This document shows, piece after piece, positions 24,369 to 60,196 of a DNA stretch of 64,000 nucleotides. The stretch is from IMG/VR virus record IMGVR_UViG_3300032268_000986, positions 186,001-250,000 of that record. One strand, given 5' to 3'. The notes below the pieces were generated by a model. That model saw nothing but the letters and a program-made list of their open reading frames with translations, searched no databases and was not told where the DNA came from. Numbering within the stretch: position 1 is the first letter of the stretch; the number at the start of each line of letters is the position of its first letter. A program made the position numbers and the translations under genes.

Positions 24369-24397
24369 ATTATACTACAAACAAGATTATTTGTCAA
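24369..24397 (-). promoter_or_regulatory. sigma70 consensus promoter upstream of the lysin
   Basis: TTGACA-17-TATAAT. Confidence 0.8.
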
Positions 24398-44332: not shown

Positions 44333-44352
44333 TGCATGCCCGTTTTTGGTAT

Positions 44353-45387
44353 TTAGCGACACTGGGATCTCCTGACTACATTAACTTCTGCTGAAGTGAC
44401 CTGTTCAATTTGATCAATTCCTATTTTTAATACTACATTTAATGTTTCTTTGCCTTGAATCTGGATGCGTCGGCTGCCAATCTCATTGAGATAACGGCTG
44501 CGATATTCACTCTGATCCAGCTCGGCTGCTGAGAAGCAGTACACCCGATCTCGACCCGTGGTGGTCTGCAGGGTCAAGCGATACATGGGTTCAGAATGCA
44601 CCATGTGACGGCGCATGATGTGCCAGGCCTGATCATCGTTGAACCAAGCACCGGGATTGTCGGCCACTAGATTTATATCCAGCACAATGCTGGCCGGCGC
44701 TGAGGCACAAGAATTTAGACCCGGATTGCATCGTGGGTACTGATTGATTGTATGCAGGGTATCTTGCATGGCTTGAATAAACTTCTTGTTCCAGGAAATG
44801 CGAAACGGAACCAAAAGATGTGCTTGTCGATTGCTGTCAAAATCCACCTTGACCGGTTGCAATCGCAGATCAAACGCTCGAGCAGGATAATCCTGCATCA
44901 CAGTGTTCAGCACCTGGTCGGCGCCCTGGCGTTGTTGCACAAGGGATCCGATTTGCACAGCCACACGATCACCGTTGATCTGTCCTGCTGTGGCACTGTT
45001 GTTGAGCAATCGGTTGGCAATGGCATTGTGAGCCACCCAGACTTCCATGACCACTCGCACGGATCTGCCCTGGTCCACACGCTCAACAATGTTGTAACGA
45101 TCAACCACACCTGAACTGTAGTTGATGATGTCTTCGCGCCCAATGCGATTGTTGCGCATCTCAGTTTCATTCAGCACCACAGTGCCCACAGCCTGCTCAA
45201 CTGCTAGCCTAAACGCCTGTTGCCGAGCCTGCTCAAAGTTGGGTGCTGTGGCTTCGACCTTGATGTAGTACACTGGCACTCGATCCAAGACCAAGTACTG
45301 TGCCGCAGTCAGCACCAGCCCTGCCACCTGAGCCTGAGCAGTGGCTGTTGCTGTGGCCAGCAACAGAGCCGCAAAATAGCGTTTCAT
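44353..45387 (-). CDS. secreted protein (FlgT-N/LPP20-like N-terminus)
   Basis: signal peptide; A...A...AVEQAVGT.V..ET. Confidence 0.55.
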   Translation of the reverse strand: MKRYFAALLLATATATAQAQVAGLVLTAAQYLVLDRVPVYYIKVEATAPNFEQARQQAFRLAVEQAVGTVVLNETEMRNNRIGREDIINYSSGVVDRYNIVERVDQGRSVRVVMEVWVAHNAIANRLLNNSATAGQINGDRVAVQIGSLVQQRQGADQVLNTVMQDYPARAFDLRLQPVKVDFDSNRQAHLLVPFRISWNKKFIQAMQDTLHTINQYPRCNPGLNSCASAPASIVLDINLVADNPGAWFNDDQAWHIMRRHMVHSEPMYRLTLQTTTGRDRVYCFSAAELDQSEYRSRYLNEIGSRRIQIQGKETLNVVLKIGIDQIEQVTSAEVNVVRRSQCR

Positions 45388-47408: not shown

Positions 47409-47695
47409 TACATCATCATTCTAACCAGGCCAACTGTGTCTATTGTGGTCAGCAATAGATAGTTAGCCAGCATGCCAAAAGATTTCCTAGTCCAACTAGC
47501 CCAAGCATACATGGCACAGCCAAGAATCCAAACAGGATAAAGAGCAAGAAGCGGAGGCGTGGGGACTGTGAGTGCCATAGTAACACTGCAACCAATGCTA
47601 GCAGCCCAAGCAAGCAACTCAATAACAAAGCGAACTCGGTTAGATCTAAAATCATCTCGTATCCAATCAAAGGTGGGTTTTAAAAGTGTGTTCAT
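47408..47695 (-). CDS. small multi-TM membrane protein
   Basis: three hydrophobic helices. Confidence 0.7.
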   Translation of the reverse strand: MNTLLKPTFDWIRDDFRSNRVRFVIELLAWAASIGCSVTMALTVPTPPLLALYPVWILGCAMYAWASWTRKSFGMLANYLLLTTIDTVGLVRMMM

Positions 47696-48852
47696 GATCT
47701 ACTGGGAAAATAATCTTGTTGTTGCCCTGGTCGGTTCAGGTCCAATGTCATGCAATGAACTCCCCCGTCCCAAAAATAAGAGTGCGGAATGTCTAGCACA
47801 TGCACAGCGATTCCGTGCTTCTCCAGTCTAGAAATTAGTTTGGTGTTTTGCACACTGGAGATGACATTTTTTTCATTGACCACTAGCATGTTCACATCAA
47901 ATATGCTTTCTCCTGATGATCCAATCCAGGAATTGAAACTAGCTTCCACAGTTGCTATCAGCTCTTGGTCTTGTTCATGTCCGGGAATCCACCAACGTGA
48001 TTTTGTTTTTTTAAAAAACTCTTTGTACTTGCTGTATTGAGCAGCCATTGCATTTGTGTTTTTGACATATATCACTTCCCAGTCTGGAAAATACGTGTCA
48101 TAGTCGATTACACAGTTGGGATCATCATGTGCCACAATCAGCCCCGGACACACAATACAAAATATGCCATCGGTGTGCCCAACCGAGTCAATTATGTGAT
48201 TGCGATAATTTGGAAATTCTGCATCGTACATGTTTTTTAATTGACCCATGTCCCGATCCTGGATTGATGTTCCAAAATACAAATCCTGTCCTGCCCTGGT
48301 TAGTGCGCCGCCATCAGACCGGTCCCAGTCAATTGTTTGATTTCCTTGCTGTTTGACAAATTGCAAGATATCACCGTGGGTGTCGTTGAAATGAGTGAAA
48401 AAACACATTTCTTGCGCCAGGCCAAATTGATCATATGCTTCAGTTATGTGCGATTCAGGGGCATGGGCTAAGAAATCATAAACGTTGTTGTACCTCTCCC
48501 AGGCCGGATCTGCTATGTTGTTGTAGTATTTTTTCCAGTATTGTGCGCTCCAGTCTTGATAATAAAATTTATCACCAATCATCATCATGTGATTACGCGG
48601 TTGTAGTGGTGGTACAAACACATTTTTTTCATGTGCAGGATACTGCAAATTCACGTTTGGCCTGAGTACTTGTACCCCAAGCTCGTGCAGTTTGTTTGCC
48701 AACAACTGTGAGCCATGTTCGGTCTCAATAGCCATTCTTTCAAACAAATCTCTCACACGGGGCACAGTGATCCAAGCATAGTATTCAGGAGGCAGTGTGC
48801 GGCCAACAATGCATGTTTTCAGTGGATCCCAGTCTTGATTCACACTAAGCAT
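47692..48852 (-). CDS. amidinotransferase-family protein
   Basis: WDPLKTCIVG, PRN, DGG, HTDG, WDGGVHCMT. Confidence 0.85.
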   Translation of the reverse strand: MLSVNQDWDPLKTCIVGRTLPPEYYAWITVPRVRDLFERMAIETEHGSQLLANKLHELGVQVLRPNVNLQYPAHEKNVFVPPLQPRNHMMMIGDKFYYQDWSAQYWKKYYNNIADPAWERYNNVYDFLAHAPESHITEAYDQFGLAQEMCFFTHFNDTHGDILQFVKQQGNQTIDWDRSDGGALTRAGQDLYFGTSIQDRDMGQLKNMYDAEFPNYRNHIIDSVGHTDGIFCIVCPGLIVAHDDPNCVIDYDTYFPDWEVIYVKNTNAMAAQYSKYKEFFKKTKSRWWIPGHEQDQELIATVEASFNSWIGSSGESIFDVNMLVVNEKNVISSVQNTKLISRLEKHGIAVHVLDIPHSYFWDGGVHCMTLDLNRPGQQQDYFPSRS

Positions 48853-49876
48853 GTTGTTGGTATCGTTGATAAACTTGTTCGCTGGCTAGATTCTTGCCCT
48901 TGGCCTCGCACTGGATATCAAAGTCTTCAGCAAACTCCAAGGCCCAATCTGTCACAGCGTCATTCCAGTAAAAGTCGCTGTGTGCTCGTAACTTTTGCTT
49001 CTTATAACCTGCATCAAGAAGGGCAGCAAGGTCTGGGAGAACTCGTTGATCATGATTGACCAAAATATCTTCGCGACTAACTGAGTAGTGAAGAGCAGGA
49101 CGAACACCACGCCAAGAGTCAATAACCCTTGCCACACGATGATCTTGAGGGGAGATGTATTCGCCGGAATTGATCCAATGATGGTGTATGTCCAGTACGA
49201 GAGCCACATGCTCAGCCACAAGTAAAGTAGTATCAAGTCCATTGCTTATTTCATCATTTTCAATAGTTATGAGGTTGCGAGCCTCGGGTGTTAATTTACC
49301 CAGTGTGCGCAAGAACTTGGCCGGGCCACCTTTGCCCGAAAGATGCACATTGATTTTAAAACCATGATCATGCCAGGTAGCGCCATAGCCCATCCAACGT
49401 GCCATGTCTGCATGATACTCAAATTCTGCAATGCTACGTTCTACAATTTCGTCACTTTCCGACGCCAGCACACAGAACTGCCCGGGATGGAACGATATGC
49501 GCACACCCAGGCGACGAGCAGTCTCGCCAACAGGTGCAAAGATCTGGGCACAGTGCTCTTGTATTTCTGTGCGTTGCCACCAGCTGATCCAGTCTTTCTC
49601 AGTGTAGCCCTGCAACATTTCTGAGCCCAATCGAACCATACGCCGTTCGGGCGGCAGTGTGCCCACACGCTCGATCATGCGAACGGCTGCGGCAGCATTG
49701 TGATTCATGATATCCCATTGGCGTTGTTCAGCTTCGCTTTTGTGCTCGCGAAGCCAGCGCATAGTGGTTGAACGCCCGTTAAGGTCCCGGTCCTTTGCAT
49801 TGACCTTCATGCCGCCGCATTCGGACGGGTCATTGAGCCATTTGCAACAGAAGCCAATTCGAGTATATGTATTCAT
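48845..49876 (-). CDS. uvsE: UV damage endonuclease UvsE/UVDE
   Basis: RIGFCC, SFHPGQF, NVH, IENDE, LDIHHH, AHSD, EAKGK; start MNTYTR. Confidence 0.9.
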   Translation of the reverse strand: MNTYTRIGFCCKWLNDPSECGGMKVNAKDRDLNGRSTTMRWLREHKSEAEQRQWDIMNHNAAAAVRMIERVGTLPPERRMVRLGSEMLQGYTEKDWISWWQRTEIQEHCAQIFAPVGETARRLGVRISFHPGQFCVLASESDEIVERSIAEFEYHADMARWMGYGATWHDHGFKINVHLSGKGGPAKFLRTLGKLTPEARNLITIENDEISNGLDTTLLVAEHVALVLDIHHHWINSGEYISPQDHRVARVIDSWRGVRPALHYSVSREDILVNHDQRVLPDLAALLDAGYKKQKLRAHSDFYWNDAVTDWALEFAEDFDIQCEAKGKNLASEQVYQRYQQHA

Positions 49877-49947
49877 GCTGTATTGTAGCACAGATTTGCA
49901 ATTATTGTCAAGCCTTGACATAAATACTTCATTATAGGACCCCAAGC

Positions 49948-50361
49948 ATGTACGTTACTATCAACACCTACAACAACGAAATTGACACTCCAATTTTGGC
50001 CAATGACATTGAAACTACATACCTACAAATTTTTGAAAAAAGATTTGAACTTGGTCTAGTAGACGGCCAAGGTTTTACTTTCATGCAAAAGGATACCGTT
50101 GATGATAGTTGGTATTCCCGTGCGGCATGGGCTGCTAGTATAACATCTAACGAAGCAATACATGGCAAGAGTCAGATCGGTGACACGGCAAAAGAGTTTG
50201 CGGAATCAAGAGTTTATTACTCACAGCGCCGTGCATGGAATACCCAGGAATCAGCTCAAGCCTATGTGGATTTTATCAATCAATTAAACTCGCCTGCTTG
50301 GTCCGCCACGTACGAAGGATTTGACGAGTCAATTCAGAATGATGGGTCAAGTCTGCTTTAA
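49948..50361 (+). CDS. hypothetical protein
   Basis: 137 aa; TAAATA and AGGA upstream. Confidence 0.6.
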   Translation: MYVTINTYNNEIDTPILANDIETTYLQIFEKRFELGLVDGQGFTFMQKDTVDDSWYSRAAWAASITSNEAIHGKSQIGDTAKEFAESRVYYSQRRAWNTQESAQAYVDFINQLNSPAWSATYEGFDESIQNDGSSLL

Positions 50362-51278
50362 TTGCTTCTGACCAAGTCCAAGGTAACACAATGAAATCCT
50401 CCGCCCAGTGTTCTGCTGTGGCGGAGTTCCAATGGGACGGTGGTGAAATTCCATTGCTCCAGTTTACGAATCAGTTCGGCTTGATGTTTGTCCACAATCA
50501 CAGTGTGCGGGTCAACCACTAACATGTTCATGGCAATCCATTTGGAAGCATAGGGATACTGATAAAAGCCCTGAGCCACAACTTCATCAACATAGATCTT
50601 GTCCCAGGTTTTGAACACCTGGGGACAGTTGTTTTCATTCACACGGGCAGCATTCAACATCACCAGCCCCTCTCGCAAGGGCACCACAGTTGAGTCAATG
50701 TGTACTCCAGCATAGAAATTGCATAACTCAATTTCAACACTGGGAAATACTTTGCACAACCAGTTGTAGGCTGCTCGATTTCCGCTGTCTGATTCCAAAA
50801 ACAGCATTTTGTCACCCAAGCGACAAACATTGGCAGCATCCAGAGTCAATCCTTCGTTGCGAGGCATAAAATGGTAATGCTCAGCCTGATCCACAATGTC
50901 ATGATAGCATTGCAGTTCCATGTCTCTGCAGGGATACATCATGGCAGGATCCACAACAGTGCTGCCATGAATCAGCAGTCGATCTCGTGGACAATAATTG
51001 TACATGCCATCATGAGTTTGGAAATTCATGGGAGTTGGACGTTCTACCTTGACACCCAGGCTCATCAGGGTCGTTGCCAGACCATCCAAATCTTCATTGG
51101 CTTCGTCAATGATCCACTGTGGCACTGCACCCGACGGCACCGGTGTTTCTTTCCACGAAGTTTTTTTACTTTCCTGAGCAAACACTGGGTCATGCCGGGG
51201 CCAGTTGGCCCAACTGGCATCGCCGACTACAATCTTTTTTAGAGGATCCCACTCGTTAAATGTTGAAATCATATCCAT
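50358..51278 (-). CDS. amidinotransferase (StrB1/AGAT-like)
   Basis: NEWDPLKKIVVG, CPRD, DAAN, HIDST, LGGGFHCVTLD. Confidence 0.9.
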   Translation of the reverse strand: MDMISTFNEWDPLKKIVVGDASWANWPRHDPVFAQESKKTSWKETPVPSGAVPQWIIDEANEDLDGLATTLMSLGVKVERPTPMNFQTHDGMYNYCPRDRLLIHGSTVVDPAMMYPCRDMELQCYHDIVDQAEHYHFMPRNEGLTLDAANVCRLGDKMLFLESDSGNRAAYNWLCKVFPSVEIELCNFYAGVHIDSTVVPLREGLVMLNAARVNENNCPQVFKTWDKIYVDEVVAQGFYQYPYASKWIAMNMLVVDPHTVIVDKHQAELIRKLEQWNFTTVPLELRHSRTLGGGFHCVTLDLVRSN

Positions 51279-51787
51279 CCTGTTATTTGCAGTGTGTATC
51301 TTGGGTCAATGCCCATGTTGGCCGCCAGATGCGGTGTATCGTATGTCCACTCTACCACATCGCCTGCTTGCCACTCAGTCACAGGCACGCCATTGCCTTC
51401 AAAGTAGTGTCCGGACCGCCAGTCCTCCAAGAACACAATGGCTCTGTGAATACGATGTTGTTGTCCCTGTAGCTTGAACAAATCAATATACTTCACATAT
51501 AGATCCCCATGAGTGGGGAGAATTGTACCTGTGCCCATTCTGTAGTAACTGGTACCAATGTCTTTCCACCCTTTTTCCCGGTACAGTTCAACAAACTGAT
51601 GATTCCAACTGGGCTGGGGACTGCGCATGTCGCACATGTCACCAGTGAATTGATTGGCATAACCCAGTGCCAACCAAGCCTGCAGGTTGTCCACATCGTT
51701 GAATGTTTCGTTGATGTAGTTGAGACCTTTGAACTCGTCGTCCCAGAACTTGGTGATATGGTACTTAGACAGCTCGTGTGTTGCCAT
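51269..51787 (-). CDS. Fe(II)/2-oxoglutarate oxygenase-like protein
   Basis: LPTHGD (HxD) ... PHLAAN.G..PRYTLQ; start uncertain (51787 or 51799). Confidence 0.75.
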   Translation of the reverse strand: MATHELSKYHITKFWDDEFKGLNYINETFNDVDNLQAWLALGYANQFTGDMCDMRSPQPSWNHQFVELYREKGWKDIGTSYYRMGTGTILPTHGDLYVKYIDLFKLQGQQHRIHRAIVFLEDWRSGHYFEGNGVPVTEWQAGDVVEWTYDTPHLAANMGIDPRYTLQITGWI

Positions 51788-53003
51788 AGTGTATGACATT
51801 GACTGTGTTGGTTGATTCTAGTTTGCGCCATGGGTCAACAATTATGCTGCCCGGCAAAATGTCACAATATGGTTTTGTGTCTGCTTGCTCGCCGGTGTAT
51901 TCGTATGTGATTTTACGATTGTGTGCCCATAATATAACACTGGGCCCAGTCAGTTCTGAAATGACTTCTGTTGCATCATCTGCCAGGGGATCTATGTATC
52001 TGACATTGAATCCCAGTTGTTTGACATAGTGCCCAACCAGGGTTGAGTATGATCCAATACAATATTCAACGTCTGGTTTGTATGCTTTGCCGTGTATCAC
52101 AACAGGCAAATTATATTTCTTGGCTTGTTCAACCAAGAACTTGGCAAGGTTTTCTGCCTGTACTTCTCTAGCATGCATCACAGTGTCAAACAGATCGTAG
52201 CCAATGTTGTATTCCTGTGCCAACCAGCGCAGTGCAATATTGTCACGTGGATGGCAAGCACCCGCATCGCCCATGCCAGCTGTCATGTACTTGGGCCCCA
52301 TGATGCGCATGGTGCTTCGAGCCAAGGCATTTGTGACCACGTCAACGTTGATGTTGCCAATTTTTAATGCAAAGTCCTGGATCATGTTCACAAGACCCAC
52401 CTTGGCTGAAATAAATGTGTTGTAGAAGATCTTGATGGCTTCGCACTCGTCCCAGGTGCCAACTTCGTAACGAGGATCATTTTCCATCACTGTTTTGTAC
52501 AGTTCGATCAGCTCACCTGCGATGCCTGTCAAACTGCCGTCCTCGGTACCAATCATGACCATTTCAGGATTGACCATGTCCCATTTTACCGACCCCATGG
52601 CAATGAGATATGGGTTGTAAACAAATTCATGTTGTGGATCCAGCAGGGGCACAAACTTGCGGCGTGTGGTACCCGGCAACACTGTGCTGATCAACACAAC
52701 TTTTTTGGGCGATGTTGCATACCGGTTGATGTTGTTGATGGCATCAATCACAGCGTCATGGCCGAAGTCTCGGGGTTCCATGTGGCTTGACGGCACTGAT
52801 CCATCATAGCCCTCGGTGTGCGGTGTTGGCACAGCCACAAAGATCCAGTCACTGCTGTTGACCAATTCTTCAATGCCGCATACTTTGACCAGGTCACTGG
52901 TGCGTGGGTAAATATCGTAACCCCAAACTTTGTGCTTTTCTGCCATTACTTCAGCACAATCAAGGCCAAGTTTTCCAATACCAATGAATCCAATTTTTTT
53001 CAT
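51765..53003 (-). CDS. UDP-glucose/GDP-mannose 6-dehydrogenase family
   Basis: GIGKLG, VAVPTP, STVLPGTT, E.IK...N, GACHPRD, AYKP. Confidence 0.9.
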   Translation of the reverse strand: MKKIGFIGIGKLGLDCAEVMAEKHKVWGYDIYPRTSDLVKVCGIEELVNSSDWIFVAVPTPHTEGYDGSVPSSHMEPRDFGHDAVIDAINNINRYATSPKKVVLISTVLPGTTRRKFVPLLDPQHEFVYNPYLIAMGSVKWDMVNPEMVMIGTEDGSLTGIAGELIELYKTVMENDPRYEVGTWDECEAIKIFYNTFISAKVGLVNMIQDFALKIGNINVDVVTNALARSTMRIMGPKYMTAGMGDAGACHPRDNIALRWLAQEYNIGYDLFDTVMHAREVQAENLAKFLVEQAKKYNLPVVIHGKAYKPDVEYCIGSYSTLVGHYVKQLGFNVRYIDPLADDATEVISELTGPSVILWAHNRKITYEYTGEQADTKPYCDILPGSIIVDPWRKLESTNTVNVIHYGNTRAV

Positions 53004-53006
53004 ACT

Positions 53007-54287
53007 ATGAGTGTTCCTTTAGATAGATTATACAATTTCTTGCATGCGGTCAGCGACCAGGATATAATAATTTATCGCTGGCATGTGCCCGGCTCAAGAA
53101 AACTTGAACACTGTACACCCCTGTGCCCATTGCCCCAGGATCGTGTGAAAAAATTCAGTACCATGCACATGGTCTGTCATGACCAAGAACCCTTGTTTTT
53201 TGATCAGTGGGAACCAGCAAAATTACAACCATTGTTCCTGGGGCCTGAGCATAAATCTGGGCCTCGTGACATACCCAACACACCGTACTCGGTACTGATG
53301 AATGCGGTTTCCGGAGAGTTCTTCTTACACGATCGTGTGCTGTTGTTACACAGTGAGCAGCGCAGCCAAGATCTCGACCAATTTGAAGCCGATGGCGCAG
53401 TGGGATGCTACTGGTGGAGTCATGCTGTGATTGCAAGAGACTGGTATCGATATGCCGAACTGGATCCAAAATTGCAAGTTGAAAAACAAGCCAAAAAAGA
53501 TTTCTTAATCTATAACCGTGCATGGGCAGGCACCCGAGAATACCGACTCAAATTTGCCGAGATGTTGATCAACCATGGTCTTTCCAGTCATTGCCAAATG
53601 GGGTTTGCTGCAACTGACGCCGGAGTTGATTATCGCGATCATCAATATCACAACACAGTATTTGGCATCAATCGCAGTGATCTTGAACAGCATTTTGTTG
53701 CCAATCATTCTCCACCTGAATCTTCAGCAGACTATGTGTCACAAGACTATGTGTCAACTGGCATAGAAGTTGTGCTAGAAACACTATTCGATGACTCACG
53801 TTGGCACTTGACTGAAAAAAGTCTGCGCCCCATAGCCTGCGGGCACCCGTTTATATTGGCAGCAACTCCAGGCAGCTTGGAATATCTGCGCAGTTACGGG
53901 TTCCAAACCTTTGAAGGCATAATTGACGAAAGTTATGACCAAGAATCTGATCCAGTAAAACGCCTGGAAAAAATCACCAAACTCATGCAAGACATTGCTG
54001 GATTACCCACACACGAAAAACATCTTTTGTGGGCACACATGCAAGTACGGGCAGATCATAATCGGCGTAGATTTTTCAGCCAGGAATTTCATGATCAAGT
54101 AATTGGCGAATTTTGTCAGAATCTCAATACAGCCGTGACGACCATGCAACAGTACGCCACGGCTGCACAGTGGCGCAGTTACATGCGTGAATTTGGGCCT
54201 GACATCATGTGTGCGCCCGAGGCAGACACTAGACAAGATGTGGTTGGTAAATGGCTAAGAATTTGGGCAGCACAGCAAGATAAGTAA
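53007..54287 (+). CDS. glycosyltransferase-like protein (GT10-like C-terminus)
   Basis: VVLET....HLTEK.LRPI..GHPF....GSL.YLR.YGF.TF...DESYD; start MSVPLD. Confidence 0.55.
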   Translation: MSVPLDRLYNFLHAVSDQDIIIYRWHVPGSRKLEHCTPLCPLPQDRVKKFSTMHMVCHDQEPLFFDQWEPAKLQPLFLGPEHKSGPRDIPNTPYSVLMNAVSGEFFLHDRVLLLHSEQRSQDLDQFEADGAVGCYWWSHAVIARDWYRYAELDPKLQVEKQAKKDFLIYNRAWAGTREYRLKFAEMLINHGLSSHCQMGFAATDAGVDYRDHQYHNTVFGINRSDLEQHFVANHSPPESSADYVSQDYVSTGIEVVLETLFDDSRWHLTEKSLRPIACGHPFILAATPGSLEYLRSYGFQTFEGIIDESYDQESDPVKRLEKITKLMQDIAGLPTHEKHLLWAHMQVRADHNRRRFFSQEFHDQVIGEFCQNLNTAVTTMQQYATAAQWRSYMREFGPDIMCAPEADTRQDVVGKWLRIWAAQQDK

Positions 54288-54290
54288 TAC

Positions 54291-55055
54291 ATGCAAGCCA
54301 AAACTTATAGATCTATCTTTGTCAGCGATGTACACCTGGGCACACGAGACTGCAAGGCCGAGCAGTTGAACAATTTTCTCAAACACAACACTTGTTTTAC
54401 ACTGTATCTAGTGGGTGACATAATTGATGCTTGGAAAATACAACAAAATCAACTGCGCTGGAAACAGAGCCACACCAATGTGGTACGAAGAGTGCTGGGT
54501 CATGCCAAGCGAGGAACTCGAGTGGTCTACGTGGCCGGCAATCATGATGAATTTTTGCGTCCCATGATTCCATATGCTGCCAGCTTTGGCAGCATAGAGA
54601 TATGCAATCAAACCGAACACATAGGTGCTGATGGCAAGCACTACTTGGTCACACACGGTGACATGTTTGATGGTATCACCAGACTGGCGCCATGGCTGGC
54701 ATTTCTAGGTGACAAAGCATATGATTTTATTCTTTCCATGAACAGCAGATTCAATTGGATAAGACATCGACTGGGATTTGGCTACTGGAGCCTGAGCAAG
54801 TTTCTCAAATACCGTGTGAAAAAAGCAGTTGATTTTGTATTCAAGTTTGAAGAAAATCTAGCAGGCTATTGTAAAAAACGTGGGTTTGACGGAGTGATCT
54901 GTGGACACATACATCATGCAGAAATAAAAGAGATCAACGGTGTCATGTACATGAATGACGGCGACTGGGTAGAGTCAATGACTGCCTTGGTCGAACATCA
55001 TGACGGGCAGTGGGAAATCGTTACCTGGACCACAGCACATGATAACAAAACCTAG
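54291..55055 (+). CDS. LpxH2/PlcP-like metallophosphoesterase (phospholipase C)
   Basis: SDVHLG, LYLVGDIID.W, GNHDE, HGD.FD, GVICGHIH, Y.NDGDWVES. Confidence 0.85.
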   Translation: MQAKTYRSIFVSDVHLGTRDCKAEQLNNFLKHNTCFTLYLVGDIIDAWKIQQNQLRWKQSHTNVVRRVLGHAKRGTRVVYVAGNHDEFLRPMIPYAASFGSIEICNQTEHIGADGKHYLVTHGDMFDGITRLAPWLAFLGDKAYDFILSMNSRFNWIRHRLGFGYWSLSKFLKYRVKKAVDFVFKFEENLAGYCKKRGFDGVICGHIHHAEIKEINGVMYMNDGDWVESMTALVEHHDGQWEIVTWTTAHDNKT

Positions 55056-55686
55056 GATAGCAATATTTTTAAATCATCCTGAATGTTCGGCGCACTGTTG
55101 TGTTGGCATGTATGAAGCCTTGCATCCACACTATCAAGTTAGATTCTTCAACCGAGATCAAATCAATTCTAGATTGTTTAAAAATCTAGACATCATTGCA
55201 TTTCCCGGGGGCATTGGTGACAGTGACACCTTTGACAAATTGGTAAAACCACGAGCCGGCTACATCAAGGACTACATCAACAATGGCGGACGTTATCTGG
55301 GAATATGCATGGGTGCATACTGGGCCGGGCATCACTACTTGAACCTGCTACATGATGCAACCGCAGAACAATATATAAAAAGACCCAATGCTGATGTGCG
55401 CCGCAGTTTTGGAACAGTTTCCAAGATAACCTGGAAAGAGCAACAAGAACACATGTACTTTTATGATGGATGCAGTTTGATTGGCGACGAAAGTCAATTT
55501 GACATCATTGCCAGGTATCCAAATCATGACCCCATGGCCATTGTTCAGAATCGCATAGGTGTGGTTGGCTGTCATCCCGAGTCCTTGCCCAGCTGGTATG
55601 ACAAGCCACACCTAAAGCCAAATTGGCATAACTATCGACATCATGAATTGTTGTTGAACTTTACTAATGAACTGCTAGCAAGATGA
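55039..55686 (+). CDS. BPL_N/class I GATase-like protein
   Basis: FPGG.G, YLGICMGAY nucleophile elbow, HPE. Confidence 0.75.
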   Translation: MITKPRIAIFLNHPECSAHCCVGMYEALHPHYQVRFFNRDQINSRLFKNLDIIAFPGGIGDSDTFDKLVKPRAGYIKDYINNGGRYLGICMGAYWAGHHYLNLLHDATAEQYIKRPNADVRRSFGTVSKITWKEQQEHMYFYDGCSLIGDESQFDIIARYPNHDPMAIVQNRIGVVGCHPESLPSWYDKPHLKPNWHNYRHHELLLNFTNELLAR

Positions 55687-56678
55687 AAACTGTTTTAATC
55701 ATAACAGATAACTTACCGGATCAAATAAATGGCGTTGTCACAACATACAAGAATATCGAGGCGTGTGCGGTTCTGGACGGTTATCGCGTTGTTTACCTTA
55801 CTCCCGGGGACTTCGGCTACATTGATTGCCCTATGTACCACGAAGTCAAGATTGCCTATCCCCGGAACCTGGGCAAGAAGATTGCGGAGATCAGTGCGGA
55901 TTATATCCATGTCGCCACAGAGGGTCCTTTGGGTTTGTGGGCTAGAAAGTATCTTTCAAAACATCGTATTAGGCACAATACTGCTTATCATACTAAGTTT
56001 CCTGAAGGACTCAAAACTCTTTTAGGCATCCCTGAACACATCACATGGCGCTATGTGCGTTGGTTTCACAAGCATTCGGGCAAGGTGCTGACCACGACAG
56101 ATACCATGGTACAAGATCTCAGATCTCATGGGTTTGATGGTGAAGTTATTCCCTGGACTCGCGGTGTTGACCGCAAGGTATTCAATGCTCGTCAACGGCA
56201 CGAATACAGCGACATGACCACCTTGGTATGTGTGAGCCGAGTGAGCAAAGAAAAAAATCTTGAAGACTTTTTTGAGCTAGAATATCCCAACTGTCGCAAG
56301 ATCATGGTGGGCGACGGACCCATGTTGGAAACTTATAAAAAACAATATCCCGATGTTGAGTTTGTGGGATTCAAGACTGGAATAGATTTGGCCATATACT
56401 ATGCCAATGCTGATGTATTTGTTTTTCCCAGTCGCTGGGAAACATTTGGATTGGTCATGATCGAAGCCATGGCCTGCGGCACTCCAGTGGCTGCATATCC
56501 AGTGACTGGTCCCTTGGATGTGGTTGAGCCCGGAGTCACTGGGTTCATGGATCAGCACCTGGCATCAGCAGTGCATCGATGCATGGGGCTTGATCGATCC
56601 AGGGTATTGCAAGGCAGCCAACGCTGGTCATGGGATCGTGCCTGGGAGATTTTTAGAGATAACCTAGTCAGCCCTTGA
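55683..56678 (+). CDS. GT4 glycosyltransferase (Agt-like glycolipid synthase)
   Basis: TD...QINGVV, IHVATEGPLG..AR, YHTKFPE, RGVD, RVSKEKN, ETFGLVMIEAMACG. Confidence 0.85.
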   Translation: MKTVLIITDNLPDQINGVVTTYKNIEACAVLDGYRVVYLTPGDFGYIDCPMYHEVKIAYPRNLGKKIAEISADYIHVATEGPLGLWARKYLSKHRIRHNTAYHTKFPEGLKTLLGIPEHITWRYVRWFHKHSGKVLTTTDTMVQDLRSHGFDGEVIPWTRGVDRKVFNARQRHEYSDMTTLVCVSRVSKEKNLEDFFELEYPNCRKIMVGDGPMLETYKKQYPDVEFVGFKTGIDLAIYYANADVFVFPSRWETFGLVMIEAMACGTPVAAYPVTGPLDVVEPGVTGFMDQHLASAVHRCMGLDRSRVLQGSQRWSWDRAWEIFRDNLVSP

Positions 56679-57045: not shown

Positions 57046-57837
57046 ATGCAACTAGCGTTTGATTTAATTTCTGACTTACACATTGACACATGGCCCACAG
57101 AGTTTTCCTGGTCTGAGCAGGCCACCAGTCCTATCTGTGTGGTGGCTGGTGATGTTTGTACTGATCGTGCCCAACTGGTAACGGTACTCAAGCATCTGGG
57201 ACAGTGTTATCAAGCAGTGTTCTATATTGATGGCAACAGCGAGCATCGTGATTATCTTGACAACCTAGGTGCCAGTTATAATGACCTTGCCCGGCAAATT
57301 CGACGTATCCCAAATGTGGTTTACCTGCAGGACAATGTGATTGTGATTGATGGCGTTGCAATTTTAGGCACCAATGGTTGGTGGGGATTTGACTTTGACT
57401 TGTCCATAGACCCTGAGCAATCTGAACTCTGGTACCGAGAGCGTCACCAGTTGAACCCTGCTGATACTCTTGCCATACGAAAAATGAGCAATACCGATGC
57501 CACGTACATGATCAACAGTGTCAGCAGATTGCAAACACACGCCGATGTCAAACACATTGTCATGGTCACTCACACTGTGCCTGATCCTGCATTGATAGCA
57601 CACGACATTGATCTTGACGGTAGCATGAGATTCAATGTCATGGGCAATCGGTTCATGATGCAGGCGCTGGCCGCTGACACTGAGAAAAAAATACACACCT
57701 GGTGCTTTGGACACTATCATGGATCAGTGGATCAGACCCGGGCCAATGTTAGATTTGTCAACAACTGTCGGGGTCGAGGTGACACAGACTATTCTCAATA
57801 TGTGTACCACCCTCGACGCATTGTGATCAACTATTAA
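57046..57837 (+). CDS. metallophosphoesterase
   Basis: SDLH, AGD, GNSE (His replaced), THTVP, FGHYH. Confidence 0.8.
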   Translation: MQLAFDLISDLHIDTWPTEFSWSEQATSPICVVAGDVCTDRAQLVTVLKHLGQCYQAVFYIDGNSEHRDYLDNLGASYNDLARQIRRIPNVVYLQDNVIVIDGVAILGTNGWWGFDFDLSIDPEQSELWYRERHQLNPADTLAIRKMSNTDATYMINSVSRLQTHADVKHIVMVTHTVPDPALIAHDIDLDGSMRFNVMGNRFMMQALAADTEKKIHTWCFGHYHGSVDQTRANVRFVNNCRGRGDTDYSQYVYHPRRIVINY

Positions 57838-58142
57838 TTTTCTTCAGGTTCTAGTTTGATTTGCAAAGGATAACTTTGCGAGCGAGCACTTATTGTAACT
57901 TCAATACCTTTTTGTTCAGCCAGTTCGTATGGTAACACCGCTACCACAGCCGAACCAGCTTCATGGATATCCACAGTGATACGTTCAGCAGTTTCTGCGT
58001 TGTAGTTGAAATATTCAATCAGACTTTCAATCACAAATTCCATAGTGGTTTGATTGTCATTGATATACACCACACGATACATTGGAGGCTCCTTGATATC
58101 CGTGGCAGGTTTAATTTTAATAACTGAGTCAGTTTGTGGCAT
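57834..58142 (-). CDS. clpS: ClpS adaptor
   Basis: PPMYRVVYINDNQTTMEFV..L...F....A..I...IH..G.AVV...YE.AEQK...YPL. Confidence 0.92.
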   Translation of the reverse strand: MPQTDSVIKIKPATDIKEPPMYRVVYINDNQTTMEFVIESLIEYFNYNAETAERITVDIHEAGSAVVAVLPYELAEQKGIEVTISARSQSYPLQIKLEPEEN

Positions 58143-58198
58143 TTTTTGTCCTTGTTGCAGTGGCAGCACTGTGCTGCCACTGTATTTACACAATTATA

Positions 58199-58651
58199 TT
58201 AGGCTGTGTATGTGATAGCAATGGCCTTTGGCTTGGCTTCCTCAGGAACTTCACGTTTTAAGTGAACACTCAAGATACCAAGTTCAAGATGTGCATTGGT
58301 GATTTCCACATGATCTGCCAACTGAAATTCTCTACGGAAATCTCTGTTGCTGATGCCTTTGTGCAAGTAGTTTGGCACAATCTTTTCGCTGTCAGGCTGA
58401 TATTCTTTGCCTTCAATGATCAAGAACTTTTTGTCCTTGGTAACTGAAAGATTGTCAAGTCCAAATCCGGCCACCGCAAGACTTATCATGTACTCATCTT
58501 CATTGATTTGTACAATGTTGTAGGGTGGATAGTTTGTTGAGCTTTGCTGAGCACTCACACGCATGAGTTCATCAAACATGTTATCAAAACCGATACCAAA
58601 TTTGGTGAGTGTGGGAATGTCGAAAGATCGAAGGGTGAGAGTTTTTGTCAT
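58199..58651 (-). CDS. small heat-shock protein (IbpA/Hsp20)
   Basis: IGFD, NYPPYNI, LAVAGF, YLHKGIS.R.F.R.F.LA, GIL...L...PEE.KP. Confidence 0.95.
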   Translation of the reverse strand: MTKTLTLRSFDIPTLTKFGIGFDNMFDELMRVSAQQSSTNYPPYNIVQINEDEYMISLAVAGFGLDNLSVTKDKKFLIIEGKEYQPDSEKIVPNYLHKGISNRDFRREFQLADHVEITNAHLELGILSVHLKREVPEEAKPKAIAITYTA

Positions 58652-58776: not shown

Positions 58777-59001
58777 TTAGAACAATTTTTTAGGAAGCTC
58801 TTGCTCGCGTAGTTTTCGCTGCCAGCGTTTTTTTGCAGCAGCGGCCTTGAGTTTGCGTTCAGTAGTGGGCTTGACGTAGCATTCACGGCTGCGCAAATCA
58901 TCCAGCAGTCCCGATGTTTGAATTTTTTTCTTGAACTTGCGCAGGGCCTTGTCTACGTTGCCATCTTGCACCAGTACTGATCTACCGTGTAATTTAGTCA
59001 T
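58777..59001 (-). CDS. rpsU: ribosomal protein bS21
   Basis: VDKALRKFKKK....G.L..LRSRECYVKPTTERK. Confidence 0.9.
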   Translation of the reverse strand: MTKLHGRSVLVQDGNVDKALRKFKKKIQTSGLLDDLRSRECYVKPTTERKLKAAAAKKRWQRKLREQELPKKLF

Positions 59002-60196
59002 TTGTTGTGTTGAGTGCGCAGGGATTGTTGATCAAGTCAGTACCAATATTGACTTGTTCAATCCCTTGCTCACGATATTTAACCAAATTGAACATATGAG
59101 GCAACAGCACTCGCTCAAGTTCGCTGTGCAGACCACGAGCTCCTGTACGGCTGGTCATGGTTCGTTTTGCAATGACCTCTAGTGCAGGGACATCAAAATT
59201 TAATTCAACTTTGTCTTGGGCAAACAACCAACGATATTGTGAAACATAGTTGTGTTTTACATCAGTGAGAATCTTTATAAGATCGTCCTGTGTGAGTTCT
59301 TGCAGGGCCACCCAACTGGGAAAACGTCCCACAAACTCAGGAATCATGCCAAACTTGATCAAATCTTCAGGTGTGGTCTGTGTCAAAGTTGCTTGTTCTG
59401 TGTGCTTGGTTAGATCAGCCGCAAACCCAATTGAAGTGCCCTTGACTCGATTCTTGACCACAGTGTCCAAGCCTACAAATGCGCCGCCGGCAATGAACAA
59501 GATGTTTGTGGTGTCAATTTCAACCATGTCGCCCGATGGGTGTTTGCGATTACCAGTGGGAGTTACTCTGCACTTGGTGCCTTCCACCAGCTTGAGCAGG
59601 GCCTGTTGCACACCTTCCCCTGACACATCTCGAGTGATACTGGCACTCTCGCTGCGCCGACTGATCTTGTCAATTTCGTCAATGAACACAATACCGCGTT
59701 GTGTTTTTTCTACGTCGCCGCCGGCAGCGGCAAACAGTCGACTGATCAAACTTTCAACGTCGTCGCCCACGTACCCTGCTTCTGTGAGGCTGGTGGCATC
59801 GGCGATCACAAACGGAACGTCAAGGTAACGAGCCACACTGCGAGCCAGCAGTGTTTTGCCTGACCCAGTGGGGCCCAGCATGAGAATATTGCATTTTTCA
59901 ATCTCAGTGTCAGATTTCAAATTGTTAATGCGTTTGTAGTGGTTGACAATGGCCACTGCCAATACCTGCTTGGCCTGGTCTTGACCGATAACATATTGGT
60001 CAAGATGTGCTTTAATACGAATTGGATCCAGCGTGGGTTCAGAACTGGTCGCTGGCAATACATCATCAGTCAGCAATGAACCGCAGAGGTCTACACACTC
60101 GTTGCAAATTGCAACAGTGTCGCCAACAATGAGTTTGGTCACTGCATCTTTGTGTTTGCCACAAAAACTACAGGTATCAGGTATGTCTTTTTTCAT
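58994..60196 (-). CDS. clpX: ClpX ATPase
   Basis: CSFC...ICNEC zinc domain, GPTGSGKT, DATSLTEAGYVG, RDVSGEGVQQ, IGF loop, GARGL. Confidence 0.96.
   Translation of the reverse strand: MKKDIPDTCSFCGKHKDAVTKLIVGDTVAICNECVDLCGSLLTDDVLPATSSEPTLDPIRIKAHLDQYVIGQDQAKQVLAVAIVNHYKRINNLKSDTEIEKCNILMLGPTGSGKTLLARSVARYLDVPFVIADATSLTEAGYVGDDVESLISRLFAAAGGDVEKTQRGIVFIDEIDKISRRSESASITRDVSGEGVQQALLKLVEGTKCRVTPTGNRKHPSGDMVEIDTTNILFIAGGAFVGLDTVVKNRVKGTSIGFAADLTKHTEQATLTQTTPEDLIKFGMIPEFVGRFPSWVALQELTQDDLIKILTDVKHNYVSQYRWLFAQDKVELNFDVPALEVIAKRTMTSRTGARGLHSELERVLLPHMFNLVKYREQGIEQVNIGTDLINNPCALNTTND

What the first reader, a model, noticed from the sequence alone, without database searches (positions are those of the whole stretch)
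51765..56678. Phage-encoded phospholipid-to-glycolipid remodelling module (PlcP-like + Agt-like GT4, with Ugd)
Seen: a late-type TAAGTA motif precedes a coupled operon of a metallophosphoesterase with GNHD (LpxH2/PlcP type, not GNRD as in LpxH), a GATase/BPL_N-like gene, and a GT4 with QINGVV/HVATEGPLG/YHTKFPE motifs. A UDP-glucose dehydrogenase lies 1.3 kb away and phoH is in the same window. Established: in phosphate-starved proteobacteria, PlcP cleaves phospholipid headgroups to DAG and Agt adds glucose or glucuronate; Ugd makes UDP-glucuronate. Inference: the phage may mine host membranes for phosphate to build its DNA while replacing the lipids with P-free glycolipids, which could also alter surface receptors. 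The inserted GATase-like gene could extend the pathway.
Basis: partly seen in the sequence, partly recalled or inferred. Interest (0 to 1): 0.82.

Follow-up and report, generated by a model that had tools for sequence, protein, structure and literature searches.

The report
Phage-encoded phospholipid-to-glycolipid remodelling genes
A 343-kb phage, and at least 600 related viral contigs, carry close relatives of the two bacterial enzymes that swap phosphorus-containing membrane lipids for sugar lipids, so the virus may free phosphorus from the host membrane; databases mislabel the first enzyme as the lipid A enzyme LpxH.

Summary
The phosphoesterase (54291-55055) belongs to the PlcP phospholipase C family, not LpxH. 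It is 56.5% identical to the protein I take to be P. aeruginosa PlcP (PA3219), 47% to the S. meliloti homologue and 20% to E. coli LpxH. In a tree it falls inside the bacterial PlcP radiation, far from LpxH. The GT4 (55683-56678) is an Agt-type diacylglycerol glycosyltransferase: 37% identical to P. aeruginosa Agt1, with the Agt-group motifs kept. In 72 of 80 related viral loci the PlcP gene is followed on the same strand by this GT4 (35) or by a GT2 (37). This mirrors bacterial plcP-agt operons (46 of 77 loci).

- The TAAGTA motif occurs at chance frequency.
- The Ugd-like gene adjoins the module in only 3 of 80 loci.
- phoH lies 52.6 kb away.
- The "GATase" is a free-standing glutaminase-fold protein with an invariant Cys-His-Glu triad. 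It is a phage-specific neighbour (27 of 80 loci) of unknown role.

Enzyme activities and phosphorus mining are inferred, not shown. I found no paper describing a viral PlcP-Agt module.

The parts
54291..55055 (+). PlcP-type metallophosphoesterase (predicted phospholipase C that cleaves phospholipids to diacylglycerol plus a phospho-headgroup)
   Evidence: Pfam Metallophos. Metal-binding residues D13, H15, D43, N84, H85, H122, H206 and H208 are invariant in a 23-sequence alignment. It is 56.5% identical to the P. aeruginosa PlcP and 47% to the S. meliloti homologue, but 20% to E. coli LpxH. LpxH NCBIfam models score 45.8 and 32.6 bits against cut-offs of 134 and 190. In the tree it falls inside the PlcP radiation, with LpxH across a 2.59 branch at 100% support. 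dN/dS against the closest relative is 0.008.
55683..56678 (+). Agt-type GT4 glycosyltransferase (predicted diacylglycerol glucosyl/glucuronosyl transferase)
   Evidence: GT4 Pfam domains. 37% identical over its full length to P. aeruginosa Agt1 (E 1e-73) and 43% to the GT downstream of Sphingomonas PlcP. Residues H103, T159, R160, R186, E190, K191, N192, E253, T254, F255, G256, E261 and W317 match the Agt-group motifs and key residues published for GTcp (bioRxiv 10.1101/2021.03.25.437072). The 36 phage GT4s form one clade, split from 51 bacterial Agt-like proteins.
55039..55686 (+). Free-standing class I glutaminase-fold protein (BPL_N/GATase-like) with an intact Cys-His-Glu triad. It is a phage-specific associate of the module and its role is unknown.
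   Evidence: Pfam BPL_N and GATase. C90, H179 and E181 are invariant in 34 homologues. The AlphaFold model has pLDDT 93.7. The best Foldseek matches are Pdx2/YaaE, HisH and PabA glutaminases (E 1e-11 to 1e-8, TM 0.6-0.7). It is present in 27 of 80 viral PlcP loci and in none of 80 bacterial PlcP loci. dN/dS is 0.085.
53007..54287 (+). 426-aa protein of a family seen mainly in viruses, possibly a divergent GT-B glycosyltransferase. It is the first gene of the packed + strand block, but in a relative it travels with the Ugd-like gene.
   Evidence: No Pfam, NCBIfam or PHROG hit. 4318 homologues were found, none with a Pfam domain among the 120 listed. The nearest ESM Atlas clusters are 95-100% viral; a weak GT10 lead scores 0.79, and structural neighbours include fusions to an NDP-sugar epimerase or a methyltransferase. 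The AlphaFold model has pLDDT 88. Foldseek gives only weak matches (E >= 0.019, TM <= 0.37), mostly to GT-B enzymes. In L015 it lies next to Ugd, inverted relative to PlcP.
51765..53003 (-). Divergent UDP-glucose/GDP-mannose dehydrogenase family protein (Ugd-like). It could supply UDP-glucuronate, but the link to the module is weak.
   Evidence: Pfam UDPG_MGDP_dh central and N-terminal domains. phrog_9148 'UDP-glucose dehydrogenase' 1.9e-89. TIGR03026 scores 135 bits, below its cut-off of 189.8. 26 of the 27 PDB matches are UDP-glucose 6-dehydrogenase family entries, and the catalytic Cys motif aligns (GACHPRD against GYCLPKD). It lies near PlcP in only 3 of 80 viral loci.

Best explanation
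The window comes from a 343-kb phage genome. It carries a phage version of the bacterial PlcP-Agt membrane lipid renovation pathway.

Proposed mechanism:
1. The PlcP-type metallophosphoesterase cleaves host glycerophospholipids (PE, PG or PC) into diacylglycerol and a phospho-headgroup.
2. The Agt-type GT4, encoded just downstream in the same gene block, transfers glucose and/or glucuronate from a UDP-sugar onto the diacylglycerol. This makes phosphorus-free glycolipids (MGDG, GADG) that keep the bilayer intact.
3. The released phospho-headgroups become available, after dephosphorylation by host or phage phosphatases, for synthesis of phage nucleotides under phosphorus scarcity.

What is shown here: family membership by sequence, tree, motifs and gene order; wide conservation in phages; strong purifying selection.

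What is inferred: both enzyme activities, the sugar donor, expression during infection, and the phosphorus benefit.

The glutaminase-fold gene between the two enzymes is a phage-specific add-on of unknown role. The Ugd-like gene may supply UDP-glucuronate but is probably a separate unit.
For: PlcP identity:
- 56.5% identical to the P. aeruginosa protein encoded directly upstream of a GT (locus). This matches the published PA3219-PA3218 operon. There the plcP mutant makes no MGDG and less GADG, and purified Agt1 makes MGDG from DAG and UDP-glucose (PMC8528852).
- 47% identical to the S. meliloti homologue. The two bacterial proteins are 47% identical to each other, against 46% published.
- In a tree of 109 sequences, five LpxH proteins are split from all PlcP-like proteins by a branch of 2.59 at 100% support. 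The phage clade (14 rows, 100%) sits inside the bacterial PlcP radiation.

Agt identity. The motifs are those listed in bioRxiv 10.1101/2021.03.25.437072.

Gene coupling:
- In 80 IMG/VR loci the PlcP gene is followed on the same strand by the GT4 in 35 (median gap 61 nt) or by a GT2 in 37 (median gap 22 nt), never by both.
- 46 of 77 of the closest bacterial loci with enough sequence downstream have the same GT4 directly downstream. This is the 'type 2' plcP-agt arrangement of PMC4796936.
- Natural GT4-PlcP fusion proteins exist.

Lipid and phosphorus context:
- A fatty acid desaturase lies near PlcP in 22 of 80 viral loci, and an alpha/beta-hydrolase in 11 of 80.
- In the cultured Pelagibacter phage Mosig, the PlcP homologue lies divergently next to a gene annotated as a phosphate ABC transporter, which I read as pstS.

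Selection: dN/dS is 0.008 for PlcP and 0.15 for GT4 against the nearest relative, at dS about 0.5.
Against: - No activity, expression or lipid data exist.
- The host is unknown. PhoH resembles that of jumbo phages of proteobacteria, while a structural protease resembles those of Synechococcus phages. Membrane composition and phosphorus status of the host therefore cannot be judged.
- No Pho box or promoter signal rose above chance.
- No dedicated phosphatase for the headgroups is conserved with the module.
- Half of the phage modules use a GT2 that has no demonstrated lipid acceptor. Its best solved relative is labelled only 'Glycosyl transferase' (5tz8/5tze, which from memory is the teichoic acid enzyme TarS).
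- The phage GT4 has Ser for Gly and Trp-Glu for Thr-Asp in the two UDP-sugar motifs.
- The Ugd link holds in only 3 of 80 loci.
Confidence: 0.62

Rival explanations
1. The biochemistry is the same (phospholipid to DAG to glycolipid), but the benefit to the phage is not phosphorus supply. Changing the envelope lipids could block superinfection, mask receptors, alter sensitivity to cationic antimicrobials or grazers, or stabilise the membrane of a cell that must support a very large phage for a long time.
For: In bacteria these glycolipids change surface properties. They raise polymyxin B tolerance in P. aeruginosa (PMC8528852) and change susceptibility to a protist predator (PMC9457565). Lipid composition also affects phage attachment in Ruegeria (PMC9938194, title and abstract). 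A fatty acid desaturase, which tunes membrane fluidity rather than phosphorus content, lies near PlcP in 22 of 80 phage loci. No Pho box was found.
Against: In the cultured phage Mosig, the PlcP homologue sits beside a phosphate ABC transporter gene that I read as pstS, and the bacterial pathway is a phosphorus-stress response (PMC4796936). No evidence bears directly on superinfection or receptors. The two benefits do not exclude each other.
Confidence: 0.2
2. The phosphoesterase and the glycosyltransferase act on non-lipid or non-DAG substrates. For example, they could cleave and re-glycosylate a phosphodiester-linked surface polymer or a nucleotide sugar. The module would then modify cell-surface glycans rather than membrane glycerolipids.
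For: Half of the phage modules pair PlcP with a small GT2. Its nearest solved relative is labelled only 'Glycosyl transferase' (5tz8/5tze, which from memory is the teichoic acid enzyme TarS) and its best NCBIfam hit is an arsenosugar-type GT, neither at family level. In this window the module is flanked by a possible GT-B protein and a nucleotide-sugar dehydrogenase.
Against: The phosphoesterase is 47-57% identical to PlcPs with genetic evidence for phospholipid turnover, and it nests among them. The GT4 keeps the residues that mutagenesis of GTcp tied to DAG binding (His, Thr-Arg, Trp). The closest bacterial loci are plcP-agt operons.
Confidence: 0.1
3. The gene is what automated annotation calls it: LpxH, UDP-2,3-diacylglucosamine diphosphatase, an auxiliary gene for lipid A (LPS) synthesis.
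For: Source databases and virome papers label it LpxH / K03269 'lipopolysaccharide biosynthesis' (PMC9611531 and PMC10653327). It gives weak hits to the LpxH models and to PDB 5b49 (E 0.0037).
Against: It scores 45.8 and 32.6 bits against LpxH equivalog cut-offs of 134 and 190, and the P. aeruginosa PlcP control scores 55.1 and 44.5 bits on the same two models. It is 20% identical to E. coli LpxH over 122 residues. It has GNHD instead of GNRD. A long, fully supported branch separates it from five LpxH sequences. Ralstonia solanacearum records hold both a true LpxH and a PlcP-type paralogue. S. meliloti, which from my own knowledge uses LpxI rather than LpxH, has a close homologue.
Confidence: 0.03
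4. The phospholipase is a membrane-disrupting lysis or host-takeover factor, and the glycosyltransferase is unrelated.
For: Phospholipases can permeabilise membranes. A GH19-LysM endolysin-like gene lies within a few kb of PlcP in 17 of 80 loci.
Against: The near-invariant same-strand coupling to a GT (72 of 80 loci, gaps of tens of nt) and the GT4-PlcP fusion proteins argue for one pathway that consumes DAG rather than for destroying the membrane. The GH19 gene is on the opposite strand in 16 of 17 loci.
Confidence: 0.05

Closest known systems
Bacterial PlcP-Agt lipid renovation pathway (S. meliloti PlcP; Phaeobacter MED193_17359; SAR11 HTCC7211 PB7211_983 and PB7211_960; P. aeruginosa PA3219 with Agt1 PA3218 and Agt2 PA0842)
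   Same: The two enzyme families and the gene order (plcP then agt on one strand) are the same. The catalytic metal-binding residues of the phosphoesterase are conserved, as are the UDP-sugar and DAG residues of the GT4. Identity to characterised members (47-57% for PlcP, 37% for Agt1) matches the identity among those members themselves.
   Different: The module is carried by phages. The phage PlcPs form their own tight clade, 81-100% identical to the window protein, and no bacterial protein in 185,579 species genomes exceeds 57%. The phage GT4s also form their own clade. No Pho box was recognisable. A glutaminase-fold gene is inserted or nearby in phages and absent from 80 bacterial loci. In about half of the phage loci a GT2 replaces the GT4.
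LpxH (UDP-2,3-diacylglucosamine diphosphatase of lipid A synthesis)
   Same: It shares the calcineurin-like metallophosphoesterase superfamily, and its substrate is likewise a lipid-linked phosphate ester.
   Different: It is a different family: 20% identity, GNRD against GNHD, a separate clade, and sub-threshold model scores.
Phage phosphorus-acquisition auxiliary genes (pstS, phoA, phoH in cyanophages and pelagiphages)
   Same: These are also host-derived genes in phages of aquatic bacteria that plausibly relieve phosphorus limitation during infection. In phage Mosig the PlcP homologue is divergently adjacent to a phosphate ABC transporter gene that I read as pstS.
   Different: Those genes import or signal phosphate. 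This module would instead recycle an internal phosphorus store, the membrane, and replace the lost lipid.
Pdx2/YaaE, HisH and PabA type class I glutaminase subunits (for the inserted gene)
   Same: The fold and the Cys-His-Glu triad are shared.
   Different: Sequence identity is only 11-21%. No synthase partner gene is adjacent. The Pfam signature is BPL_N. The family is mostly phage-borne and has no match in cultured phage genomes.

Membership tests
PlcP (metallophosphoesterase-type phospholipase C of lipid remodelling) | Calcineurin-like metallophosphoesterase fold with the full set of metal-binding motifs (DxH, GD, GNH[D/E], H, GHxH) | tested here: met
   Pfam Metallophos. D13, H15, D43, N84, H85, H122, H206 and H208 are invariant across 23 phage and bacterial homologues, including the P. 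aeruginosa and S. meliloti proteins.
PlcP (metallophosphoesterase-type phospholipase C of lipid remodelling) | Groups with genetically characterised PlcPs and apart from LpxH in a phylogeny | tested here: met
   The tree has 109 rows with five LpxH proteins as outgroup. The LpxH/PlcP split has 100% support and branch length 2.59. The phage clade nests within the radiation that holds the P. aeruginosa and S. meliloti proteins.
PlcP (metallophosphoesterase-type phospholipase C of lipid remodelling) | Sequence identity to characterised members in the range seen among them (about 46-47%) | tested here: met
   56.5% to the P. aeruginosa protein and 46.9% to the S. meliloti protein. The two bacterial proteins are 47% identical to each other. 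The published values are 46-47% (PMC8528852).
PlcP (metallophosphoesterase-type phospholipase C of lipid remodelling) | Gene linked to a gene for a DAG-consuming surrogate-lipid synthase (agt, pgt or btaAB) | tested here: met
   In the window an Agt-like GT4 lies in the same packed block. In 72 of 80 viral loci a GT4 or a GT2 follows directly downstream. The arrangement matches types 2, 3 and 5 of PMC4796936.
PlcP (metallophosphoesterase-type phospholipase C of lipid remodelling) | Phospholipase C activity releasing DAG from PE, PG or PC | not testable with these tools
   This needs enzyme assays or mutant complementation with lipidomics.
PlcP (metallophosphoesterase-type phospholipase C of lipid remodelling) | Induction by phosphorus stress (Pho box, PhoB control) | tested here: inconclusive
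   An E. coli-type Pho box search gave 6 weak matches against 9.4 expected. The host and its PhoB site are unknown, and no intergenic DNA lies upstream of the block.
LpxH (UDP-2,3-diacylglucosamine diphosphatase) | Scores above the curated equivalog cut-offs of NF003743 and TIGR01854 | tested here: not met
   45.8 bits against 134, and 32.6 bits against 190.35. The P. aeruginosa PlcP control scores 55.1 and 44.5 bits, also below both cut-offs.
LpxH (UDP-2,3-diacylglucosamine diphosphatase) | GNRD form of the third phosphoesterase motif, and clustering with LpxH sequences | tested here: not met
   The window has GNHD where P. aeruginosa LpxH (5b49) has GNRD. It is 20% identical to E. coli LpxH. 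It falls in a separate clade.
Agt/GTcp group of GT4 diacylglycerol glycosyltransferases | GT4 GT-B architecture, with clearly higher identity to group members than to other GT4 enzymes (reported as <25% to the others) | tested here: met
   Pfam Glyco_transf_4 and Glycos_transf_1. 37% identical to P. aeruginosa Agt1 and 43% to the Sphingomonas plcP-linked GT over the full length. 36-44% identical to 46 bacterial plcP-adjacent GTs. The criterion comes from bioRxiv 10.1101/2021.03.25.437072.
Agt/GTcp group of GT4 diacylglycerol glycosyltransferases | UDP-sugar motifs GRVAxEKN and FPSxTDTFG, the catalytic His/Asp dyad, and the DAG-binding Thr-Arg and Trp | tested here: met
   The window has SRVSKEKN and FPSRWETFG. 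R186, E190, K191, N192, T254, F255, G256, E261, H103, T159, R160 and W317 are kept. The Asp of the dyad is Glu253, as in 10 of 50 bacterial members. I mapped residues to GTcp numbering by motif strings only, because the GTcp sequence itself was not available.
Agt/GTcp group of GT4 diacylglycerol glycosyltransferases | Transfers glucose and/or glucuronate from a UDP-sugar to DAG | not testable with these tools
   This needs heterologous expression with lipidomics or in vitro assays. Donor specificity differs among characterised members: Agt1 uses glucose only, Agt2 uses glucuronate, and Agt and GTcp are promiscuous.
UDP-glucose 6-dehydrogenase (Ugd) | N-terminal Rossmann fold, a central domain with the catalytic Cys motif, and a family-level model score | tested here: inconclusive
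   The Pfam N-terminal and central domains are present. The catalytic Cys motif aligns with solved UGDHs. TIGR03026 scores 135 bits, below its cut-off of 189.8, and no Pfam hit covers the C-terminal UDP-binding domain. The substrate is not established.
Class I glutamine amidotransferase (glutaminase subunit) | Class I GATase fold with a Cys-His-Glu triad, working with a synthase partner | tested here: inconclusive
   The fold and the triad are met. No synthase partner is encoded next to the gene, and no NCBIfam model matches it.

The most novel reading that the evidence does not exclude
Phages of aquatic bacteria carry a lipid island of their own making: a highly conserved PlcP, an interchangeable DAG glycosyltransferase (GT4 or GT2), a triad glutaminase-fold enzyme, and often a fatty acid desaturase. 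On this reading the island rebuilds the infected cell's membrane into a phage-specified lipid composition. That could include a glycolipid headgroup not made by any known bacterial pathway, for example one further modified with the help of the glutaminase-fold protein. Infection would then leave a measurable imprint on lake and ocean lipid pools and phosphorus budgets.
Probability: 0.15. Interest if true: 0.85.

Novelty: new variant of a known kind. Interest (0 to 1): 0.7.

Why it matters
Phosphorus often limits growth in lakes and the open ocean, and a phage genome of 343 kb needs about 0.7 million phosphorus atoms per copy. By my own rough estimate, not a tool result, membrane phospholipids are one of the larger phosphorus stores in a bacterial cell.

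- A phage-borne PlcP-Agt module would be a new class of auxiliary metabolic gene. It would recycle an internal phosphorus store rather than import phosphate, while keeping the membrane intact until lysis.
- The gene is abundant.
- Virome studies currently count it as 'lpxH, LPS biosynthesis'. Relabelling it changes how those catalogues are read.
- It also means that part of the glycolipid signal used as a marker of phosphorus stress in natural waters could come from infected cells.
- The idea can be tested with standard expression and lipidomics.

Tried and rejected
- TAAGTA as a late promoter: 14 copies against 12.6 expected by chance. Rejected.
- Pho box and sigma-70 promoter or terminator scans near the module: all at chance level.
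- Near-identical cultured phage: no megablast hit. No cultured phage carries the glutaminase-like gene or a close GT4.
- Host inference: PhoH points to jumbo phages of proteobacteria, while a protease points to Synechococcus phages. The window has no tRNA. Left open.
- 426-aa protein: no family hit. The model is good, but only weak GT-B matches came back. I call it a possible glycosyltransferase and no more.
- Identity of the GT2 as a lipid glycosyltransferase: there are only sub-threshold hits (arsenosugar-type GT, GT21, and the solved chains 5tz8/5tze labelled 'Glycosyl transferase') and Atlas leads to carotenoid glycosyltransferases. Unresolved.
- Repeated swapping of GT2 and GT4 partners: the PlcP tree needs 5 changes, but well-supported branches force only 1. 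Inconclusive.
- The original S. meliloti PlcP paper could not be read. The S. meliloti homologue is therefore identified by organism and by its 47% identity to the P. aeruginosa protein, not by locus tag.
- Literature searches for a viral or phage PlcP found nothing.

Full report
**What is there.** The window is part of IMG/VR contig IMGVR_UViG_3300032268_000986, which is 342,865 bp long (100% match). It is a phage:
- It carries tail fibre and other virion-type genes.
- It has no close match among cultured phages.
- It encodes ClpX, ClpS, two ClpP, Hsp20, ribosomal protein S21, NadE, PhoH and a DNA ligase.

Four genes on the + strand are packed without intergenic DNA.

| Coordinates | Product | Junction with the next gene |
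|---|---|---|
| 53007-54287 | 426-aa protein of unknown family | stop lies 3 nt before the next start |
| 54291-55055 | metallophosphoesterase | 17-nt overlap |
| 55039-55686 | BPL_N/GATase-like protein | ATGA overlap |
| 55683-56678 | GT4 glycosyltransferase | end of the block |

These junctions are read. A UDP-glucose/GDP-mannose dehydrogenase family gene (51765-53003) runs the other way. Its start codon is only 3 nt from that of the 426-aa gene.

**Check of the observation.**
- Confirmed: the phosphoesterase with GNHD, the BPL_N/GATase-like gene, the GT4 with the quoted motifs, the Ugd-like gene 1.3 kb away, and phoH at 878-1705.
- Not supported: the 'late-type TAAGTA motif'. The hexamer occurs 14 times in the window against 12.6 expected by chance, and the copy at 54281-54286 overlaps the stop codon of the 426-aa gene.
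- Missed: the 426-aa gene itself.
- Corrected: the glutaminase-like gene more likely starts at 55039, because its homologues are about 213 aa long.

**The phosphoesterase is a PlcP, not an LpxH.**
- NCBI's two LpxH equivalog models score 45.8 and 32.6 bits against cut-offs of 134 and 190. The P. aeruginosa PlcP scores 55.1 and 44.5 bits, also well below both cut-offs.
- The only PDB match is P. aeruginosa LpxH at E 0.0037. In that alignment the window's GNHD faces LpxH's GNRD.
- Identity to E. coli LpxH is 20% over 122 residues.
- The protein is 56.5% identical to a P. aeruginosa protein encoded directly upstream of a GT. It is 47% identical to the S. meliloti homologue.
- The P. aeruginosa pair fits the published PA3219-PA3218 operon. 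The paper gives 46% identity between PA3219 and S. meliloti PlcP, and I measure 47% between the two proteins fetched here.
- In that study the plcP mutant made no MGDG and less GADG. Purified Agt1 and Agt2 made MGDG and GADG from DAG (PMC8528852).
- All metal-binding residues are invariant in an alignment of phage and bacterial homologues.
- In a maximum-likelihood tree of 109 sequences, five LpxH proteins are separated from all PlcP-like proteins by a branch of 2.59 with 100% support. The LpxH proteins are from E. coli, Aeromonas, Neisseria, Ralstonia and Acinetobacter. The phage sequences form one tight clade (100%) inside the bacterial PlcP radiation, which holds the P. aeruginosa and S. 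meliloti proteins.

**The GT4 is an Agt-type enzyme.**
- It aligns over its full length with P. aeruginosa Agt1 (37%, E 1e-73). It also aligns with the GT downstream of a Sphingomonas PlcP (43%, E 2e-89).
- The study of the SAR11 enzyme GTcp defines the group by two UDP-sugar motifs (GRVAxEKN, FPSxTDTFG), a His/Asp dyad and DAG-binding residues (bioRxiv 10.1101/2021.03.25.437072).
- The window protein has SRVSKEKN and FPSRWETFG and keeps the corresponding Arg, Glu, Lys, Asn, Thr-Phe-Gly, Glu, His, Thr-Arg and Trp. The Asp is replaced by Glu, as in 10 of 50 bacterial members.
- The 36 phage GT4s form a single clade, split from the 51 bacterial ones.

**The pair is a conserved unit.**
The best 80 are 81-100% identical to the window protein.
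The 120 listed are 82-89% identical. Contigs carrying some of them also carry rIIB, a RecA/UvsX-type recombinase and DNA ligase genes.
- I clustered all ORFs of the 80 viral loci. PlcP is followed on the same strand by the GT4 in 35 loci (median gap 61 nt) or by a 239-aa GT2 in 37 loci (median gap 22 nt), never by both. The remaining loci are mostly cut off.
- No protein in one genome per 185,579 bacterial and archaeal species exceeds 57% identity. In 46 of the 77 closest bacterial loci with enough sequence downstream, a homologue of the window's GT4 (36-44%) lies directly downstream. This is the plcP-agt arrangement reported for marine bacteria (PMC4796936).
- Four representatives in the clustered protein library are GT4-PlcP fusion proteins.
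- Against its closest relative (L013, dS about 0.5), dN/dS is 0.008 for PlcP, 0.085 for the glutaminase-like gene, 0.15 for GT4, 0.14 for the 426-aa gene and 0.05 for Ugd. All of these genes are under purifying selection, and PlcP shows the lowest dN/dS of the ten genes compared.

**The other genes.**
- *Glutaminase-like gene.* The BPL_N/GATase-like protein folds with high confidence (pLDDT 93.7). It most resembles glutaminase subunits such as Pdx2/YaaE, HisH and PabA. Its Cys-His-Glu triad is invariant in 34 homologues. It lies near PlcP in 27 of 80 viral loci, in varying position and sometimes on the other strand. It is absent from all 80 bacterial loci and from cultured phage genomes. I cannot assign it a step. 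No synthase partner is adjacent.
- *426-aa protein.* Its nearest ESM Atlas clusters are 95-100% viral. The model is good, but it gives only weak matches, mostly to GT-B glycosyltransferases. A weak GT10 lead and structural neighbours fused to sugar-nucleotide enzymes point the same way.
- *Ugd-like gene.* This gene, the 426-aa gene and two downstream genes occur near PlcP in only 3 of 80 loci. In L015 the block is inverted and about 2.5 kb away. I therefore treat it as a neighbouring sugar-nucleotide unit. It may feed UDP-glucuronate to the GT4, but this is not shown. The protein keeps the catalytic Cys motif but scores below the family cut-off.
- *Other lipid genes in related phages.* A fatty acid desaturase lies near PlcP in 22 of 80 loci and an alpha/beta-hydrolase in 11. 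This strengthens the lipid context. The window itself holds no homologue of the desaturase.
- *Mosig.* In the cultured Pelagibacter phage Mosig, the PlcP homologue (48.5%) lies divergently beside a gene annotated as a phosphate ABC transporter, which I read as pstS.

**Mechanism.** The best-supported reading is that the phage makes a PlcP that cleaves host phospholipids to DAG and phospho-headgroups. An Agt-type enzyme then turns the DAG into glucosyl- or glucuronosyl-DAG.
- Shown here: family membership, conserved coupling and purifying selection.
- Inferred: the two activities, the sugar donor, timing of expression, and the use of the freed phosphorus for phage DNA.
- Remaining gaps: the host is unknown, I found no regulatory signal, and I could not obtain transcript data.

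**Rivals.**
- The same chemistry could serve envelope remodelling rather than phosphorus supply.
- The module could act on a non-lipid substrate. The uncharacterised GT2 partner keeps this open.
- The LpxH annotation is contradicted by the sequence evidence.
- A lytic phospholipase does not fit the tight coupling to a GT.

**Novelty.** The bacterial pathway is well known. I also read two papers on phage Mosig and its relatives. Virome papers list the gene as 'lpxH, LPS biosynthesis'. GenBank records for phages Mosig and S-SRM01 call it a UDP-2,3-diacylglucosamine hydrolase. I rate it a new variant of a known kind: a known pathway on a new carrier. The phage version has its own clades for both enzymes, an alternative GT2 partner and a phage-specific glutaminase-fold associate.

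Noticed in passing
window 41530-42123(-), 43760-44362(-), 57834-58193(-), 58199-58651(-), 58777-59001(-), 58994-60196(-): The phage encodes a full Clp set (two ClpP, ClpS, ClpX), an Hsp20 and a ribosomal protein S21.
   Followed up: partly
window 53003/53007: The start codons of the Ugd-like gene (- strand) and the 426-aa gene (+ strand) are 3 nt apart, with no intergenic DNA. The promoters of both must therefore lie inside coding sequence.
   Followed up: partly
window 47692-48852(-), 50358-51278(-), 51269-51799(-): There are two paralogous genes of phrog_25854, one with a weak dimethylargininase-fold hit, and a 176-aa gene of unknown family. The second paralogue and the 176-aa gene travel with the Ugd-like gene in L013 and L015. 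They may form a sugar-nucleotide or small-molecule pathway.
   Followed up: no
window 35180-36103(-) and 57046-57837(+): The window holds two further metallophosphoesterases. The second (phrog_1649; TIGR03729-like) lies 370 nt beyond the GT4, but it is near PlcP only in the window and in L013.
   Followed up: partly
L032:11052-11882(+), L073:9381-9998(-), L052:1180-1794(+): Related phage loci carry a fatty acid desaturase (22 of 80), an alpha/beta-hydrolase (11 of 80) and a DUF4337 protein (19 of 80) within about 5 kb of PlcP. This suggests a wider lipid island.
   Followed up: partly
proteins P0154, P0166, P0219, P0251: These are natural fusion proteins with an N-terminal GT4 and a C-terminal PlcP-type phosphoesterase. 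Their organisms were not identified.
   Followed up: partly
L001:4894-5841(-) and L001:5992-6729(+): In the cultured Pelagibacter phage Mosig, the PlcP homologue (annotated as a putative UDP-2,3-diacylglucosamine hydrolase) lies divergently next to a putative phosphate ABC transporter gene that I read as pstS. No GT lies downstream.
   Followed up: partly
L004:8907-9626(+) and 36 other viral loci: A 239-aa GT2 replaces the GT4 downstream of PlcP in about half of the phage loci. It has no counterpart in the 80 closest bacterial PlcP loci and no assignable acceptor.
   Followed up: partly
window 48845-49945(-), 24387-25262(-), 40263-41537(-): The window also encodes a UV damage endonuclease UvdE, an NAD synthase NadE and a radical SAM protein.
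   Followed up: no
L175 and L177 (Ralstonia solanacearum records in the plasmid collection): Ralstonia solanacearum records hold both a true LpxH (44% to E. coli LpxH) and a PlcP-type paralogue (52% to the window protein). L175's LpxH and PlcP-type genes in other bacterial records carry the same product name, 'UDP-2,3-diacylglucosamine diphosphatase'; L177 has no annotation.
   Followed up: partly
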